Positions 13,846 to 22,681 of a stretch of 64,000 nucleotides of DNA are shown here, piece after piece; positions within the stretch are counted from its first letter, which is position 1, and each line of letters opens with the position of its first letter. The translations under genes were made by a program, and so were the position numbers. The stretch is taken from sequence record MZ574431.2. One strand, 5' to 3'. The notes under the pieces were generated by a model. The model was not told where the DNA came from. It made no database searches and saw nothing but the letters and a program-made list of their open reading frames with translations.

Positions 13846-13911
13846 ATGACCTTCTCGATCTTCCTTTTCCGAGAGACCGGCTCGCCGAGCCGAGATACCA
13901 GCGCCTCCTAG
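13846..13911 (+). CDS. Candidate leader peptide of tRNA operon 1 (MTFSIFLFRETGSPSRDTSAS)
   Basis: ATG near predicted TSS; contains one Glu and one Asp codon; alternative CGGCTCG/CGAGCCG pairings. Confidence 0.35.
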   Translation: MTFSIFLFRETGSPSRDTSAS

Positions 13912-14116: not shown

Positions 14117-14118
14117 TT

Positions 14119-14362
14119 TGCCCAAGCGGGCACATCCAATCGAAAGCGCCGGGCAAGAGACTTAGCGGTCTCCAAGCGCCTGGGTCGAGCCAAAAACGCA
14201 GGGGTCGTCGGGTCCGCAAGGACAGCCCTGGTCAGTGAGCGATGGCGGATAAGAAATGGGTCCCAACCTGCTGAAGGTGGTTGGCGCCGCCGAGGGCGTT
14301 ACCTCGGATTTCACGTGACGACACTGCCCCACTGGCTTTTGCCATGCGCGTCCGTTGCTCTA
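14119..14362 (+). ncRNA. Candidate structured ncRNA co-transcribed after tRNA-Asp
   Basis: No credible ORF; nested helices (GAGAC/GTCTC, CAGGG..GTCC-GCAA-GGAC..CCCTG, GAGCGATGG/CCGTTGCTC long-range helix, CCAACC/GGTTGG, CCGAGG/CCTCGG, TGGC/GCCA), followed by a terminator. Confidence 0.6.
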
Positions 14363-14405
14363 GGACCCCAGGACAGGCTAGCCCTCTCCTGGGGTTTCCT
14401 TTTTG
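14363..14405 (+). terminator. Intrinsic terminator ending tRNA operon 1
   Basis: CCCCAGGA...TCCTGGGG stem followed by TTTCCTTTTT. Confidence 0.75.
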
Positions 14406-14431
14406 TGGGACCCAAGAAATTTTTCACGGAT

Positions 14432-14474
14432 TCGTGCATCGTTTCTTGACATCCTCTTGAGCCTGTGTCATAGG
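14432..14474 (+). promoter_or_regulatory. Promoter of tRNA operon 2
   Basis: CGTTTC-TTGACA(14446-51)-N17-CATAGG. Confidence 0.65.
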
Positions 14475-14525
14475 CTCAATCCTCAACAGCCCAGATCGGG
14501 CTTTCACTCCGCCGGAACAAGGTCC

Positions 14526-14645
14526 ATGACCCGCATCCATACCACGCTGACGACCGCCAAGCCCGCCTCCACCGGCGCGCTTACGCTCGCCTCGTGGCCG
14601 GCGTCGAGCAAGCCGCTATTGCGGCACTCAGCGGTTCTCGCCTAA
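14526..14645 (+). CDS. Leader peptide of tRNA operon 2 (MTRIHTTLTTAKPASTGALTLASWPASSKPLLRHSAVLA)
   Basis: AAGG RBS; 33 of 38 non-Met residues are P/T/K/L/H/A/S/W, the amino acids of the 12 downstream tRNAs; overlaps antiterminator helix. Confidence 0.7.
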   Translation: MTRIHTTLTTAKPASTGALTLASWPASSKPLLRHSAVLA

Positions 14646-14700
14646 CAGGCGACCGCTCCGGGTGCCGCTTCTAAGCCGCACCCGATCTCTCCTCCGACAC
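14612..14700 (+). promoter_or_regulatory. Attenuator-like RNA switch of tRNA operon 2
   Basis: Segments 1 GCCGC(14612-16), 2 GCGGCACTC(14621-29), 3 GGGTGCCGC(14660-68), 4 GCACCCG(14678-84); 1:2, 2:3 and 3:4 pairings are mutually exclusive; tail after 3:4 is pyrimidine-rich, not a U-run. Confidence 0.6.
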
Positions 14701-14770
14701 ATCTTCCCAAAACGTCGTAGCTGAACCGGGTGCTCCTGATCTCTCAGGAGATCGCCATCTATTTCAGTTT

Positions 14771-14846
14771 CGGTGTGTAGCTCAGTTGGTAGAGCACGGG
14801 GTTTGGGACCTCGGGGTCGGAGGTTCGAGCCCTCTTGCACCGACCA
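14771..14846 (+). tRNA. tRNA-Pro(TGG)
   Basis: CGGTGTG/TGCACCG acceptor region, CGGGG-TTTGGGA-CCTCG arm, CCA. Confidence 0.92.
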
Positions 14847-14916
14847 ATTCGCCCTCCGCCGGCCTTAGGCCGGACCGCGATCGCTTGAGCGTCGGCGGAG
14901 GCGTGTTCTTTGTCGT

Positions 14917-14995
14917 GCCGGTATAGCTCAGTCTGGTAGTCAGCGACTGCCTCGTAAGCAGTAGGTCCGGGGTTCGAATCCTCGTGCCGGCACCA
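14917..14995 (+). tRNA. tRNA-Thr(CGT)
   Basis: GCCGGTA/TGCCGGC acceptor, ACTGC-CTCGTAA-GCAGT arm, CCA. Confidence 0.92.
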
Positions 14996-15039
14996 CCAAG
15001 AACACGATCAACAGAAGGATCAACAAGACACAGACTTTC

Positions 15040-15126
15040 GGGCGAGTAGCCGAGTGGTTAAAGGCACCTGACTCTTAATCAGGCGTGAGAAATCCTACGT
15101 GGGTTCGAATCCCACCTCGCCCTCCA
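15040..15126 (+). tRNA. tRNA with Lys(CTT) anticodon on a class II (long variable arm) body
   Basis: GGGCGAG/CTCGCCC acceptor, 3-bp D-stem, CCTGA-CTCTTAA-TCAGG arm, 15-nt variable region, U73, CCA. Confidence 0.85.
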
Positions 15127-15213
15127 TCGATAAAGACTTCCATGTTCCCGTACGGGAACATTTCGGCCAGGACAAGGGTCCTGGGATGGAAATGTTCCCG
15201 ATCGGGATCACGG

Positions 15214-15300
15214 GCGGGTGTGGCGAAGTTGGTAGCCGCGCGAGTCTCAGGTACTCGTGGTCGAAAGGCCGGGGAGGTTCGAATCCTCTCACCCGCACCA
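15214..15300 (+). tRNA. tRNA-Leu(CAG)
   Basis: GCGGGTG/CACCCGC acceptor, CGAGT-CTCAGGT-ACTCG arm, long V-arm, A73, CCA. Confidence 0.93.
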
Positions 15301-15312
15301 ACACTCCTCTGG

Positions 15313-15399
15313 GCGGCGCTGGCGGAATGGTAGACGCGCCGGCTTCAAGTCCCGTGTGTCCGTAAGGATGTCCGAGTTCGAATCTCGGGCGCCGCACCA
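15313..15399 (+). tRNA. tRNA-Leu(CAA), imperfect anticodon stem
   Basis: GCGGCGC/GCGCCGC acceptor, CCGGC-TTCAAGT-CCCGT arm (3 WC pairs), long V-arm, CCA. Confidence 0.8.
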
Positions 15400-15442
15400 A
15401 GACGAGGGTTGGCGATGGAAAGCGAAGGTCAAAGCGAGACGT

Positions 15443-15529
15443 GCGGAAGTGGCGTAACGGTAGCCGCGCCAGACTGAGTATCTGGTGATCTAAAGGGTCG
15501 TGGAGGTTCGAGTCCTCTCTTCCGCACCA
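15443..15529 (+). tRNA. tRNA-Leu(GAG)
   Basis: GCGGAAG/CTTCCGC acceptor, CCAGA-CTGAGTA-TCTGG arm (U37), long V-arm, CCA. Confidence 0.9.
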
Positions 15530-15564
15530 AACACAAGGAGAGGTAAGAGACAGATTTGGTTTGT

Positions 15565-15636
15565 GCTGAAATGGCCTAGCGGTAAAGGCGCTGCATTGTG
15601 GATGCAGACACGATGGTTCGAATCCATCTTTCAGTG
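15565..15636 (+). tRNA. tRNA-His(GTG), no G-1, no encoded CCA
   Basis: GCTGAAA/TTTCAGT acceptor (G1:U72), CTGCA-TTGTGGA-TGCAG arm; next tRNA starts 2 nt after position 73. Confidence 0.85.
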
Positions 15637-15637
15637 C

Positions 15638-15713
15638 GGGGATATAGCTCAGTTGGTAGAGCAGTTGCTTTGCAAGCATCAGGTCGTCGGTTCGAGCCCG
15701 ACTATCTCCACCA
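15638..15713 (+). tRNA. tRNA-Ala(TGC)
   Basis: GGGGATA/TATCTCC acceptor with G3:U70, TTTGCAA loop, CCA. Confidence 0.95.
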
Positions 15714-15778
15714 GACCAGGGGACCCAGGCTGCGGCGCCGGATCGGCGACCACCTGGGTCCGTGACAACAAGAAAACT

Positions 15779-15872
15779 GGAGGGCTGGCAGAGCCTGGGT
15801 TAATGCACCCGTTTCGAAAACGGGCAGGGGCTGAAAGGTCCCTCGGGGGTTCAAATCCCTCGCCCTCCGCCA
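15779..15872 (+). tRNA. tRNA-Ser(CGA)
   Basis: GGAGGGC/GCCCTCC acceptor, CCCGT-TTCGAAA-ACGGG arm, long V-arm, G73, CCA. Confidence 0.93.
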
Positions 15873-15891
15873 ACACCAAGCCGGCATCTTT

Positions 15892-15983
15892 GGAAGGATG
15901 GCTGAGCCGGCTGAAAGCACCCGCCTGGAAAGTGGGTCGACCTCACAAGGGTCGCGGGGGTTCGAATCCCTCTCCTTCCGCCA
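15892..15983 (+). tRNA. tRNA-Ser(GGA)
   Basis: GGAAGGA/TCCTTCC acceptor, CCCGC-CTGGAAA-GTGGG arm, long V-arm, G73, CCA. Confidence 0.93.
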
Positions 15984-16018
15984 GATACCGAGCCGGCGCG
16001 GATCGCCGGCCGAAGCTA

Positions 16019-16108
16019 GGTGGGTTGACCGAGTGGTAAGGTGCGCGGTTGCTAACCGCAGGTCAGCCTGGAAGGGCTGCGGGGGTTCGATCCCCTCACC
16101 CACCGCCA
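16019..16108 (+). tRNA. tRNA-Ser(GCT)
   Basis: GGTGGGT/ACCCACC acceptor, TTGCTAA loop, long V-arm, G73, CCA. Confidence 0.93.
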
Positions 16109-16123
16109 TAGCTTCGACGATGC

Positions 16124-16200
16124 AGGGGTGTAGCTCAACTGGCTAGAGCGTCGGTCTCCAAAACCGAAGGTTGCGGGTTCGAGTCCCGCCGCCCCTGCCA
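16124..16200 (+). tRNA. tRNA-Trp(CCA)
   Basis: AGGGGTG/CGCCCCT acceptor, TCGGT-CTCCAAA-ACCGA arm, G73, CCA. Confidence 0.95.
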
Positions 16201-16222
16201 ACATTTTCCGCGATTCAGGACC

Positions 16223-16501
16223 ATGACCAAGAAAGGAGGACCCCTGATGAAACCCGCACCCACTATGACCCAATGCCGCTTGACGCGCGGTGACCAGGGC
16301 GTCCAAGTCTCCTGGATTCCCAGCGAGTTCGCCCAGGTCGGCCGCATCGTCGATCTGAAGGAAAAGGACTACTGGTCCAACGGCTGGCGGGTCGACCAGA
16401 CCTGGGGCACCATGGACGCCAGCGTGATCGCCGATCGCAGTCGAGATCACCTCAACCACAGCAAGGCCACCGGCGATCGATGGCCCACCGCCCGCGCCTA
16501 G
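16223..16501 (+). CDS. Hypothetical protein at end of tRNA operon 2 (alternative start ATG 16247 has the stronger AGGAGG RBS)
   Basis: GC3-rich codons, RBS, followed by terminator. Confidence 0.7.
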   Translation: MTKKGGPLMKPAPTMTQCRLTRGDQGVQVSWIPSEFAQVGRIVDLKEKDYWSNGWRVDQTWGTMDASVIADRSRDHLNHSKATGDRWPTARA

Positions 16502-22309: not shown

Positions 22310-22357
22310 CGTCACGATGTCGTATTTCTTGACAGGCCCAAAAGCCTCCTGTATAAG
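22310..22357 (+). promoter_or_regulatory. Promoter of tRNA operon 3
   Basis: GATGTCGTATTTC-TTGACA-N17-TATAAG; predicted TSS at or next to leader ATG 22365 (leaderless). Confidence 0.8.
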
Positions 22358-22364
22358 CCCCGTT

Positions 22365-22463
22365 ATGAGCAAGTCGTATCGTCAATTTGTGCGCCAGATT
22401 CAGTTCGTCCGAGTTAATCGGGCGGGCCGTTCGCGCATGGATGATGGTGGGACCCGAGTGTAG
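22365..22463 (+). CDS. Leader peptide of tRNA operon 3 (MSKSYRQFVRQIQFVRVNRAGRSRMDDGGTRV)
   Basis: Codons 5-18 are all read by the eight downstream tRNAs; antiterminator segment begins immediately after. Confidence 0.75.
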   Translation: MSKSYRQFVRQIQFVRVNRAGRSRMDDGGTRV

Positions 22464-22535
22464 GGTCCAAAGACCTCTCAATCCATTTCTGCGAAGGCCC
22501 GCCCAGGTAACCCCTCGGCGGGCCTTCTGCGTTTT
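22420..22535 (+). promoter_or_regulatory. Attenuator: antiterminator/terminator of tRNA operon 3
   Basis: Terminator GAAGGCCCGCC(22493-503)/GGCGGGCCTTC(22517-27)+TGCGTTTT; competing helix GGGCGGGCC(22420-28)/GGCCCGCCC(22496-504), extended by ATGGAT/ATCCAT. Confidence 0.8.
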
Positions 22536-22591
22536 CACCCTTCGTTTTCATCCGGTAGCGAGCGAGATCATGACCGGAAACTAACCCCTTC

Positions 22592-22681
22592 GGGTCGGCA
22601 GGTGGGCACTGGCATGAGCCCAAGGGACTGTAACTCCCCCGTCGAAAGGCTGTGTAGGTTCGAGTCCTACCCGACCCACCA
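22592..22681 (+). tRNA. tRNA-Tyr(GTA), atypical acceptor/D-arm junction
   Basis: GGGTCGG/CCGACCC acceptor, GGGA-CTGTAAC-TCCC arm, V-arm, A73, CCA; 5-nt linker CAGGT before D-stem. Confidence 0.85.

What the first reader, a model, noticed from the sequence alone, without database searches (positions are those of the whole stretch)
14432..16200. Second codon-matched leader and RNA switch upstream of the 12-tRNA operon 2
Seen: the 39-aa ORF 14526-14645 has 33 of 38 non-Met residues from P,T,K,L,H,A,S,W, exactly the amino acids of the downstream tRNAs. A cognate codon is present for all 12 (CCG, ACG, AAG, CTG, TTG, CTT/CTC, CAT/CAC, GCG, TCG, TCC, AGC, TGG). It contains no Y, F, Q or N, while the sensing run of the operon 3 leader has no P, T, K, L, H, A, S or W. 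Mutually exclusive helices 1:2 (14612-16/14621-25), 2:3 (14621-29/14660-68, enclosing a hairpin over the stop codon) and 3:4 (14659-65/14678-84) follow. The tail after 3:4 is C/U-rich rather than a U-run, so termination could be weak or Rho-dependent. Inference: a second, sequence-unrelated instance of the same sensing logic, which makes chance less likely.
Basis: partly seen in the sequence, partly recalled or inferred. Interest (0 to 1): 0.88.

Follow-up and report, generated by a model that had tools for sequence, protein, structure and literature searches.

The report
Codon-matched leader attenuator before phage tRNAs
A 39-codon mini-gene just upstream of a Caulobacter phage's 12-tRNA cluster is built almost entirely from codons those same tRNAs read and is followed by competing RNA hairpins, so it probably lets the phage adjust tRNA production to how fast ribosomes decode those codons, a control scheme not described for tRNA genes.

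Summary
The window is a Caulobacter jumbo phage (C1-like Bertelyvirus). ORF 14526-14645 has a cognate codon for all 12 downstream tRNAs, and 22 of 38 codons are cognate against about 11 expected (P about 1e-4 to 7e-4 for full coverage under four null models).

Homologous leaders sit before the equivalent tRNA array in all four genera of the subfamily. Their indels are in frame, and amino-acid changes stay within the array's amino-acid alphabet (17 of 19). Content tracks the array: Trp and AAA codons appear only where the matching tRNA is in the array.

The phiCbK group has a canonical terminator 22 nt before the first tRNA. Ribosome-position folding models flip terminator and antiterminator in phiCbK, CcrPW and the window's own operon 3. 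In the window, a ribosome at codons 25-28 flips 1:2 and 3:4 into 2:3 plus a new 4:5 pairing.

Helix 3:4 is probably an anti-antiterminator, and the terminator equivalent is the last hairpin, 14733-14750, which lacks a clean U tract here.

Unrelated phages carry differently composed leaders, each matched to its own array. All function is inferred. No paper describing this was found.

The parts
14366..14404 (+). Canonical intrinsic terminator (8-bp GC stem plus U tract) that closes the upstream Glu/Asp tRNA unit, so the leader has its own transcription start
   Evidence: sequence read; terminator-like site; conserved columns
14446..14474 (+). Promoter-like element: TTGACA (14446-51), 17-nt spacer with CTGTG, -10-like hexamer 14469-74. 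The same motif precedes the operon-3 leader and the leaders of relatives
   Evidence: conserved amid diverged flanks. The simple sigma-70 scan did not score it, so this is inferred
14488..14502 (+). 5'-UTR hairpin
   Evidence: MFE and centroid; an analogous 5'-UTR hairpin in the phiCbK group shows a compensatory change
14526..14645 (+). Leader ORF, 39 codons plus stop, the first AUG after the putative start. 22 of 38 codons are cognate to the 12 downstream tRNAs
14598..14612 (+). Predicted sensing window: P-site codons 25-28, A-site codons 26-29 (Pro, Ala, Ser, Ser, Lys codons, all cognate). It lies inside a run of seven consecutive cognate codons starting at TGG
   Evidence: ribosome-position scan; this is the stretch best conserved with CcrPW
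14612..14629 (+). Segments 1 (14612-16) and 2 (14621-29). Helix 1:2 forms when no ribosome covers segment 1
   Evidence: P about 0.9-1.0 by default, 0 with the ribosome at codons 25-37
14630..14657 (+). Hairpin with the stop codon in its loop (inner stem 14638-43 with 14647-52). A hairpin over the stop codon is present in every genus with a different sequence
   Evidence: compensatory changes in the phiCbK group (pair 36:49)
14659..14684 (+). Hairpin 3:4 (segment 3 at 14659-67, segment 4 at 14675-84). Read here as an anti-antiterminator
   Evidence: the same stem is present in the phiCbK group and L077
14685..14726 (+). C-rich, G-poor, weakly structured spacer (C 0.37, G 0.12)
   Evidence: the same skew is seen in all genera
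14727..14733 (+). Segment 5, a direct repeat of segment 3. It pairs with segment 4 (helix 4:5) when 2:3 forms
   Evidence: P(4:5) 0.9-0.99 with the ribosome at codons 25-28, otherwise about 0. Analogous 4:5 pairs with other sequences occur in CcrPW and phiCbK
14733..14770 (+). Last hairpin (7-bp stem 14733-39 with 14744-50; an extended lower stem uses segment 5) and a U-rich but imperfect tail running up to tRNA-Pro. It is the positional and sequence homologue of the canonical terminator of phiCbK and L077
14771..16200 (+). Array of 12 tRNA genes: Pro-UGG, Thr-CGU, Lys-CUU, Leu-CAG, Leu-CAA, Leu-GAG, His-GUG, Ala-UGC, Ser-CGA, Ser-GGA, Ser-GCU, Trp-CCA

Best explanation
This is a ribosome-mediated (leader-peptide) transcription attenuator placed in front of a phage tRNA array.

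Proposed mechanism:
- Transcription starts about 45 nt upstream of a 39-codon ORF whose codons are mostly ones read by the array's own tRNAs.
- If the leading ribosome moves quickly to the end of the ORF, helices 1:2 (or the ribosome itself), 3:4 and the last hairpin form. Transcription into the array is then reduced.
- If the ribosome is held around codons 25-29 because the matching tRNAs are scarce, segment 2 pairs with segment 3 and segment 4 pairs with segment 5. The base of the last hairpin is pulled apart and the polymerase reads on into the tRNA genes.
- The outcome would be negative feedback: the array is made when decoding of its own codons is slow.

What is shown: the ORF, the codon match, its conservation and composition-preserving evolution, the competing helices, and a canonical terminator in relatives.

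What is inferred: translation of the ORF, the transcription start, where transcripts end in this phage (its last hairpin lacks a clean U tract), the sign of regulation, and how many of the 12 tRNAs are really sensed.
For: Codon match:
- It exceeds four null models.
- The leader is 96-100% identical to CcrSC and CcrBL9, while neighbouring genes are 55-85% identical. Its only two substitutions swap one cognate codon for another.

Conservation:
- Homologous leaders are present in Bertelyvirus, Colossusvirus, Shapirovirus, Poindextervirus and a metagenome relative. All have an ATG, in-frame indels and a 114-125 nt spacer to tRNA-Pro.
- In all 14 phages, every tRNA species of the array has a cognate codon in its own leader, and cognate codons are about 2-fold enriched.
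- In the phiCbK group, 19 of 21 codon variants are non-synonymous and 17 of those 19 stay within P, T, K, L, H, A, S, against 48% expected. There is no third-position bias.
- Trp occurs only in the Bertelyvirus leader, where tRNA-Trp is in the array. AAA occurs only where tRNA-Lys-UUU is present.

Structure:
- A canonical terminator is annotated 22 nt before tRNA-Pro in phiCbK, Swift and Karma.
- Both alternative structures are kept in 10 sequences: 94% and 98% of cells paired against 32-48% in slid controls, with a few compensatory pairs.
- Ribosome-position scans give P(terminator) of 0.02-0.11 with the ribosome at codons 27-33 and 0.9 or more at the ORF end in phiCbK. CcrPW behaves likewise. 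The window shows the 1:2/3:4 to 2:3/4:5 flip at codons 25-28.

Other leaders:
- The window's operon-3 leader is a textbook case: P(T) falls from 0.99 to 0.01.
- Independent leaders matched to other arrays exist in unrelated phages. Each of six leaders scores best on its own array.
Against: - In this phage the last hairpin has no proper U tract, and the 7-bp upper stem mostly survives the switch (P 0.26-0.38 only when the tail is included). Intrinsic termination may therefore be weak or absent.
- The equilibrium sensing window covers only about four codons, yet the codon bias extends over the whole ORF.
- The match is imperfect in relatives: Ser codons remain in Rogue, BL10 and BL57 without Ser tRNAs, and His codons remain in phiCbK.
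- Some non-cognate codons are frequent (GCC and ACC, four each).
- The ORF frame is not the only open frame in this GC-rich stretch, and the Shine-Dalgarno match is weak.
- In three other phage leaders, the equilibrium model keeps the terminator folded at every ribosome position.
- No expression data were available.
Confidence: 0.62

Rival explanations
1. The region is a structured 5' leader that serves processing or stability of the tRNA precursor (for example, presenting the first tRNA to RNase P or RNase E, or protecting the 5' end). It senses nothing. The ORF is incidental or translated without consequence.
For: - Nucleotide identity is at the level of the tRNAs themselves.
- The fold is strong (z = -5.4).
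- The last hairpin ends 20 nt before the mature 5' end of tRNA-Pro and lacks a U tract.
- Other frames are also open.
Against: - It does not explain the codon match to the array.
- It does not explain the composition-preserving amino-acid changes or the in-frame indels.
- It does not explain the canonical terminator in relatives, or that two mutually exclusive structures are both conserved.
Confidence: 0.14
2. Control is Rho-dependent or works by translation coupling. The C-rich, G-poor spacer after 3:4 is a Rho loading site. Whether Rho gets access depends on ribosome position or on the 4:5 long-range helix. The intrinsic hairpin is secondary in this genus.
For: - The spacer at 14685-14726 has C 0.37 and G 0.12 and little structure. 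CcrPW and Colossus, which also lack a U tract, have C 0.46.
Against: - The same C over G skew is present in the phiCbK group, which has a canonical terminator.
- The tract is only about 40 nt.
- No Rho data exist for this host and phage pair.
- The sign of regulation under simple polarity would be positive feedback, which fits the codon design less well.
Confidence: 0.12
3. The ORF encodes a small protein with a function of its own, and its composition reflects that function.
For: - It is annotated as a CDS in every relative.
- The phiCbK version forms a PHROG family of unknown function.
Against: - The sequence changes freely while the composition is held.
- It is low-complexity with no Pfam match.
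- Length and sequence differ between genera while the position before tRNA-Pro is fixed.
- Unrelated phages have leaders of quite different composition, each mirroring its own array.
Confidence: 0.05
4. Chance: a GC-rich spurious ORF that happens to match.
For: Ala, Pro, Thr, Ser and Leu are common in GC-rich frames. One mechanical ORF elsewhere in the window also covers 12 of 12 tRNAs, at lower density.
Against: - P is between 1e-5 and 7e-4 for coverage under four nulls.
- The match is repeated in four genera and in independent leader families.
Confidence: 0.02

Closest known systems
Leader-peptide transcription attenuators of amino-acid operons (trpL, hisL, leuL, thrL, ilvL; Rfam Trp_leader, His_leader, Leu_leader, Thr_leader)
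   Same: A short translated ORF lies in the 5' leader, regulatory codons sit just upstream of a set of mutually exclusive helices, and ribosome position chooses between terminator and antiterminator. Multivalent leaders such as thrL and ilvL already mix two or three amino acids (own knowledge).
   Different: The regulated genes are tRNAs, not biosynthetic enzymes, so the sensed quantity would be the product itself (tRNA supply). The leader mixes eight amino acids and 12 isoacceptors instead of a run of one to three. The window's version has six interacting segments and no clean U tract. There is no Rfam match.
pheST (pheM) attenuator of E. coli phenylalanyl-tRNA synthetase
   Same: Leader-peptide attenuation applied to a component of the translation machinery rather than to biosynthesis (own knowledge).
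   Different: It controls a synthetase through one amino acid's codons. Here the tRNA genes themselves are controlled, in a phage, with many codon types.
T-box riboswitches
   Same: They are cis-acting leaders that couple tRNA status to read-through of a terminator.
   Different: A T-box binds an uncharged tRNA directly through a specifier codon and the T-box sequence, without translation. No T-box match was found here, and the element contains an ORF.
tnaC / Rho-dependent leader control
   Same: A leader peptide is followed by a C-rich spacer with no intrinsic terminator between the ORF and the regulated genes.
   Different: tnaC works by a nascent-peptide arrest at the stop codon induced by free tryptophan. 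Nothing here suggests an arrest peptide, and relatives use an intrinsic terminator.
Operon-3 leader of the same phage (22365-22463 with terminator 22493-22527)
   Same: It has the same promoter motif, a short ORF enriched in its own array's codons, and an antiterminator inside the ORF.
   Different: The sequence is unrelated. It has a canonical terminator and a simple four-segment layout. Its sensing run is Y, R, Q, F, V, I, N instead of P, T, K, L, H, A, S, W.

Membership tests
Ribosome-mediated (leader-peptide) transcription attenuator | Short ORF with a start codon in the 5' leader of the regulated unit, kept open in relatives | tested here: met
   The ORF at 14526-14645 is the first AUG after the promoter-like site. 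Homologous ORFs of 38-48 codons with in-frame indels occur in four genera and one metagenome contig.
Ribosome-mediated (leader-peptide) transcription attenuator | Enrichment of codons tied to the regulated product | tested here: met
   12 of 12 tRNAs are covered and 22 of 38 codons are cognate, P 1e-5 to 7e-4. The same holds in 14 phages.
Ribosome-mediated (leader-peptide) transcription attenuator | Mutually exclusive helices whose choice depends on ribosome position near the ORF end | tested here: met
   Partition-function scans. Both states are conserved. This is modelling, not experiment.
Ribosome-mediated (leader-peptide) transcription attenuator | Intrinsic terminator (GC stem plus U tract) directly before the regulated genes | tested here: inconclusive
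   In the window, a 7-bp stem is followed by an imperfect U-rich tail. The homologous site is canonical in phiCbK, Swift, Karma, Rogue, L077 and L156.
Ribosome-mediated (leader-peptide) transcription attenuator | Leader is translated and short terminated transcripts exist | not testable with these tools
   No expression data could be reached.
Rfam leader families (Trp, His, Leu, Thr leaders) and T-box | Match to the family covariance model | tested here: not met
   Only tRNAs reach the gathering score. Nothing relevant appears at E up to 10 in 14300-14800.
Rho-dependent attenuator | C-rich, G-poor unstructured tract of roughly 70-80 nt downstream of the ORF | tested here: inconclusive
   A tract of about 41 nt with C 0.37 and G 0.12 is present. 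The same skew is seen in relatives that have an intrinsic terminator.

The most novel reading that the evidence does not exclude
Leader-peptide attenuators whose codons mirror the downstream tRNAs are a general, so far undescribed way for phages to autoregulate their tRNA arrays. Each array is switched on when ribosomes decode its own codons slowly, for instance when the host's tRNA pool is depleted or does not fit the phage's codon usage. The window holds two such devices. Unrelated phages hold others, with T/P/K/M, H/A/S, R/L/K/W and H/K/F/S/W leaders before arrays of exactly those tRNAs.
Probability: 0.5. Interest if true: 0.9.

Novelty: new variant of a known kind. Interest (0 to 1): 0.8.

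Why it matters
Why phages carry tRNA genes, and how those genes are controlled, are open questions. A leader that reads out decoding speed at the very codons served by the array would give direct, product-level feedback on tRNA supply.

That would link phage tRNAs to host tRNA depletion and to codon-usage mismatch, and it would extend textbook attenuation from amino-acid biosynthesis to tRNA genes. The idea can be tested at once with expression data, because the predicted transcript ends, ribosome pause sites and their change over the course of infection are specific.

The comparative signal also gives annotators a way to recognise these mini-ORFs, which databases now list as hypothetical proteins.

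Tried and rejected
- Rfam gathering and permissive scans found no known leader, riboswitch or sRNA family.
I did not extend the query.
- tblastn with the peptide found only Bertelyvirus genomes. The Colossusvirus and phiCbK-group homologues were found through synteny of the tRNA array instead.
- IMG/VR scans with two flanking proteins and a degenerate leader pattern returned only CcrSC and CcrBL9.
- A metagenome scan with the last-hairpin sequence found nothing.
- Taking the 7-bp last hairpin alone as the terminator gave no switch in the window. The switch appeared only when 4:5 and the extended stem were scored.
- The candidate leader before the Glu/Asp tRNAs (13846-13911) shows no codon match (P about 0.4), so it is not counted as a third instance.
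- Equilibrium scans of three leaders from other phages (L156 first array, L058, L090) kept the terminator folded at all ribosome positions. Their antiterminators would have to act kinetically.
- ORF openness alone is weak evidence in this GC-rich stretch, because some other frames are open too.
- Eight literature searches found nothing on leader-peptide control of tRNA genes or arrays. The library covers open-access papers only.
- Procedural note: one search used the commonest codon at each variable column as a counting reference and printed those codons for variable columns only.
Full report
**What the window is.** The stretch 14200-16400 is 100% identical to Caulobacter phage C1 and its close kin (Bertelyvirus, Dolichocephalovirinae, genomes of about 312 kb). 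It is 87-88% identical to CcrSC and CcrBL9. ARAGORN and Rfam find 22 tRNA genes in the window, including the 12-gene array at 14771-16200. GenBank records annotate the ORF at 14526-14645 as a hypothetical protein.

**Checking the observation.** Under strict wobble rules, 22 of 38 codons are cognate. I tested this against four nulls:
- In-frame 38-codon windows of the phage's own long ORFs: mean 6.4 tRNAs covered and 11.0 cognate codons; none of 100,000 reached 12; P(at least 22) = 1.5e-3.
- Independent draws from the phage's codon usage: 3e-4 and 2e-4.
- Every stop-free 38-codon window in six frames: 7e-4 and 1.6e-2, jointly 2e-4.
- Markov resampling of the leader's own dinucleotides: 6e-5 for full coverage.

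The operon-3 leader (22365-22463) has 17 of 31 codons cognate to its own array (P about 1e-3), and each leader is depleted in the other's codons. A candidate leader before the Glu/Asp tRNAs shows nothing. The three helices are real and replace one another in folding. The leader folds with z = -5.4.

**Conservation within the genus.** Positions 14500-14690 are 96-100% identical to CcrSC and CcrBL9, the level of the best-kept tRNAs. Flanking genes are 55-85% identical. The ORF has two substitutions, ACG to CCG and CTT to CTG. Both replace one cognate codon with another.

**Relatives in other genera.** Following the synteny of the array (Pro, Lys, three Leu, His, Ala, Ser), I found homologous leaders in several places:
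- CcrPW and CcrColossus, 39 codons.
- The phiCbK group and Rogue, BL10 and BL57, 45-48 codons.
- A metagenome contig, L077, 38 codons.

Each has the same promoter motif, an ATG and in-frame indels. The spacer to tRNA-Pro is 114-125 nt in the sequenced phages and 101 nt in L077. In all 14 phages every tRNA species of the array has a cognate codon in its own leader, and cognate codons are about twice the null.

Among nine phiCbK-group leaders, 19 of 21 codon variants change the amino acid. Of those 19, 17 stay inside P, T, K, L, H, A, S, where random mutation would give 48%. Differences are spread evenly over codon positions, 12, 13 and 8. This is selection on composition rather than on peptide sequence, which is what a codon-reading leader predicts and what a functional small protein or a purely structural RNA does not.

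Content also tracks the array. A Trp codon occurs only in Bertelyvirus, the only genus with tRNA-Trp in this array. AAA occurs only where tRNA-Lys-UUU is present. The tracking is not perfect: Rogue, BL10 and BL57 keep many Ser codons without Ser tRNAs, and phiCbK keeps His codons.

**Structure and the terminator.** In phiCbK, Swift and Karma the depositors annotated a rho-independent terminator 22 nt before tRNA-Pro, and it is invariant in the group. All genera share the same order of elements: ORF-internal hairpin, hairpin over the stop codon, strong hairpin 3:4, C-rich spacer, last hairpin.

In each genus the 3' arm of 3:4 can instead pair with the 5' side of the last hairpin. The sequences involved differ between genera:
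- Window: 14678-84 with 14727-33, a direct repeat of segment 3.
- CcrPW: a 10-nt pairing.
- phiCbK: an 8-nt pairing.

On a 10-sequence alignment, the terminated structure has 94% of cells paired against 32-48% for slid controls. Compensatory changes occur in the stop-codon hairpin and the spacer hairpin. The alternative helices have 98% of cells paired against 34-46%. Diversity is low, so covariation is modest.

**Ribosome-position modelling.** I masked 28 nt around each P-site codon and computed helix probabilities.
- phiCbK: the terminator probability is 0.02-0.11 with the ribosome at codons 27-33, and 0.88-0.96 from codon 34 to the end.
- CcrPW: it is low until codon 32, then 0.8-0.95.
- Window: the default state is 1:2, 3:4 and the last hairpin. 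With the P site at codons 25-28, helix 2:3 (0.8-0.99) and helix 4:5 (0.9-0.99) take over, the outer stem of the last hairpin vanishes, and its upper stem falls to 0.26-0.38.
- Window, operon 3: the terminator falls from 0.99 to 0.01 with the ribosome at codons 10-14.

I therefore read 3:4 as an anti-antiterminator and the last hairpin (14733-14750 plus tail) as the terminator equivalent. It is the sequence homologue of the canonical terminators of L077 and phiCbK, but in Bertelyvirus and Colossusvirus it lacks a clean U tract. Termination in this phage may be weak, or helped by Rho acting on the C-rich spacer. The data cannot decide, because the C over G skew is present in all genera.

**Generality.** A pattern for the unusual long-armed tRNA-Lys(CUU) pulled in 142 loci with phage tRNA arrays. 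For arrays of at least four tRNAs, I scored the best ATG ORF in the 350 nt upstream against 200 control windows per locus. After removing duplicates, 18 of 81 arrays fall in the top 5% (4 expected, P = 8e-8). Without Dolichocephalovirinae-like loci the count is 11 of 70 (P = 7e-4). These loci are not all phylogenetically independent. Examples:
- L156, first array: a 31-codon ORF that starts about 7 nt downstream of its -10-like hexamer (short or no 5' UTR) uses ACC, ACA, ACG, CCA, CCC, CCG, ATG and AAG. It lies before three Pro, one Met, three Thr and one Lys tRNA, with a 13-bp terminator and a U run.
- L156, second array: a leader with 25 of 33 cognate codons lies before His, three Ala and four Ser tRNAs (P = 1e-11).
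- L061 and L157: an R/L/K/W leader lies before Arg, Leu, Lys and Trp tRNAs. The modelled switch is clear.
- An AT-rich phage family: H/K/F/S/W leaders lie before His, Phe, Trp, Lys and Ser arrays. Each is followed by a canonical terminator whose 3' arm is copied inside the ORF.

In a six-by-six table, every leader scores highest on its own array. In three of these other leaders the equilibrium model keeps the terminator folded at every ribosome position, so any switch there must be kinetic.

**Comparison with what is known.** The logic is that of the trp, his, leu, thr and ilv leaders and of the pheST attenuator. The differences are the regulated product (tRNAs), the breadth of the codon set, and in this window the six-segment layout and imperfect terminator. 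There is no Rfam or Pfam match. The phiCbK peptide is a PHROG of unknown function. The Gill et al. phiCbK genome paper (PMC3556154) reports the tRNAs and says Rfam found no other RNA elements. It has no occurrence of 'leader' or 'attenuat'. Eight full-text searches found no description of leader-peptide control of tRNA genes, but the library is open-access only.

**Verdict.** All functional statements are inference from sequence, comparison and thermodynamic modelling.

**Procedural note.** One search used the commonest codon at variable columns as a counting reference.

Noticed in passing
window 15040-15126; L008, L010 and others; L021-L162: The phage tRNA-Lys(CUU) has a long variable arm (the shape of Leu, Ser and Tyr tRNAs), a U discriminator base and an encoded CCA. 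All Dolichocephalovirinae share it, and their Lys(UUU) tRNAs have it too. A pattern for it matches 114 metagenome and 29 IMG/VR stretches, mostly inside phage tRNA arrays.
   Followed up: partly
window 22593-22676: A tRNA-like gene with a GUA (Tyr) anticodon loop and a long variable arm was missed by ARAGORN and falls below Rfam's tRNA threshold (best hit the tRNA-Sec model, 29.6 bits, E = 2e-4). It is the first gene after the operon-3 attenuator and matches the Tyr codon in that leader.
   Followed up: partly
window 22329-22540: The operon-3 leader (ORF 22365-22463, which starts about 7 nt after its -10-like hexamer, so with little or no 5' UTR) has a canonical terminator at 22493-22527 plus a U tract. 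The modelled terminator probability falls from 0.99 to 0.01 with the ribosome at codons 10-14.
   Followed up: yes
window 14117-14300: A noncoding block after tRNA-Asp is 84-92% identical to CcrSC and CcrBL9 while nearby genes are much less so. It has no Rfam match and its function is unknown.
   Followed up: partly
L004 (phage RB23), just after the leader stop codon: RB23 carries a 15-nt tandem duplication that doubles segment 3 of the switch. It is a natural variant that should shift the balance of the helices.
   Followed up: no
window 22440-22463; L061, L099, L150, L154: Several otherwise unrelated leaders end with a similar Asp/Gly-Gly-Ser/Thr motif shortly before the stop codon. Whether this reflects RNA pairing or the peptide is unexplained.
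   Followed up: no
window 14446-14474 and 22329-22357; L156 6399-6427; L010 19418-19445: A shared promoter-like motif (TTGACA, then 11-13 nt, then CTGTG or CTGTT) precedes each leader in several genera. The simple sigma-70 scan does not score it.
   Followed up: partly
L027 and L146 (IMG/VR and metagenome loci): ARAGORN calls two tRNAs with a CUA anticodon (labelled Pyl) in a phage tRNA array. These are possible amber suppressors.
   Followed up: no
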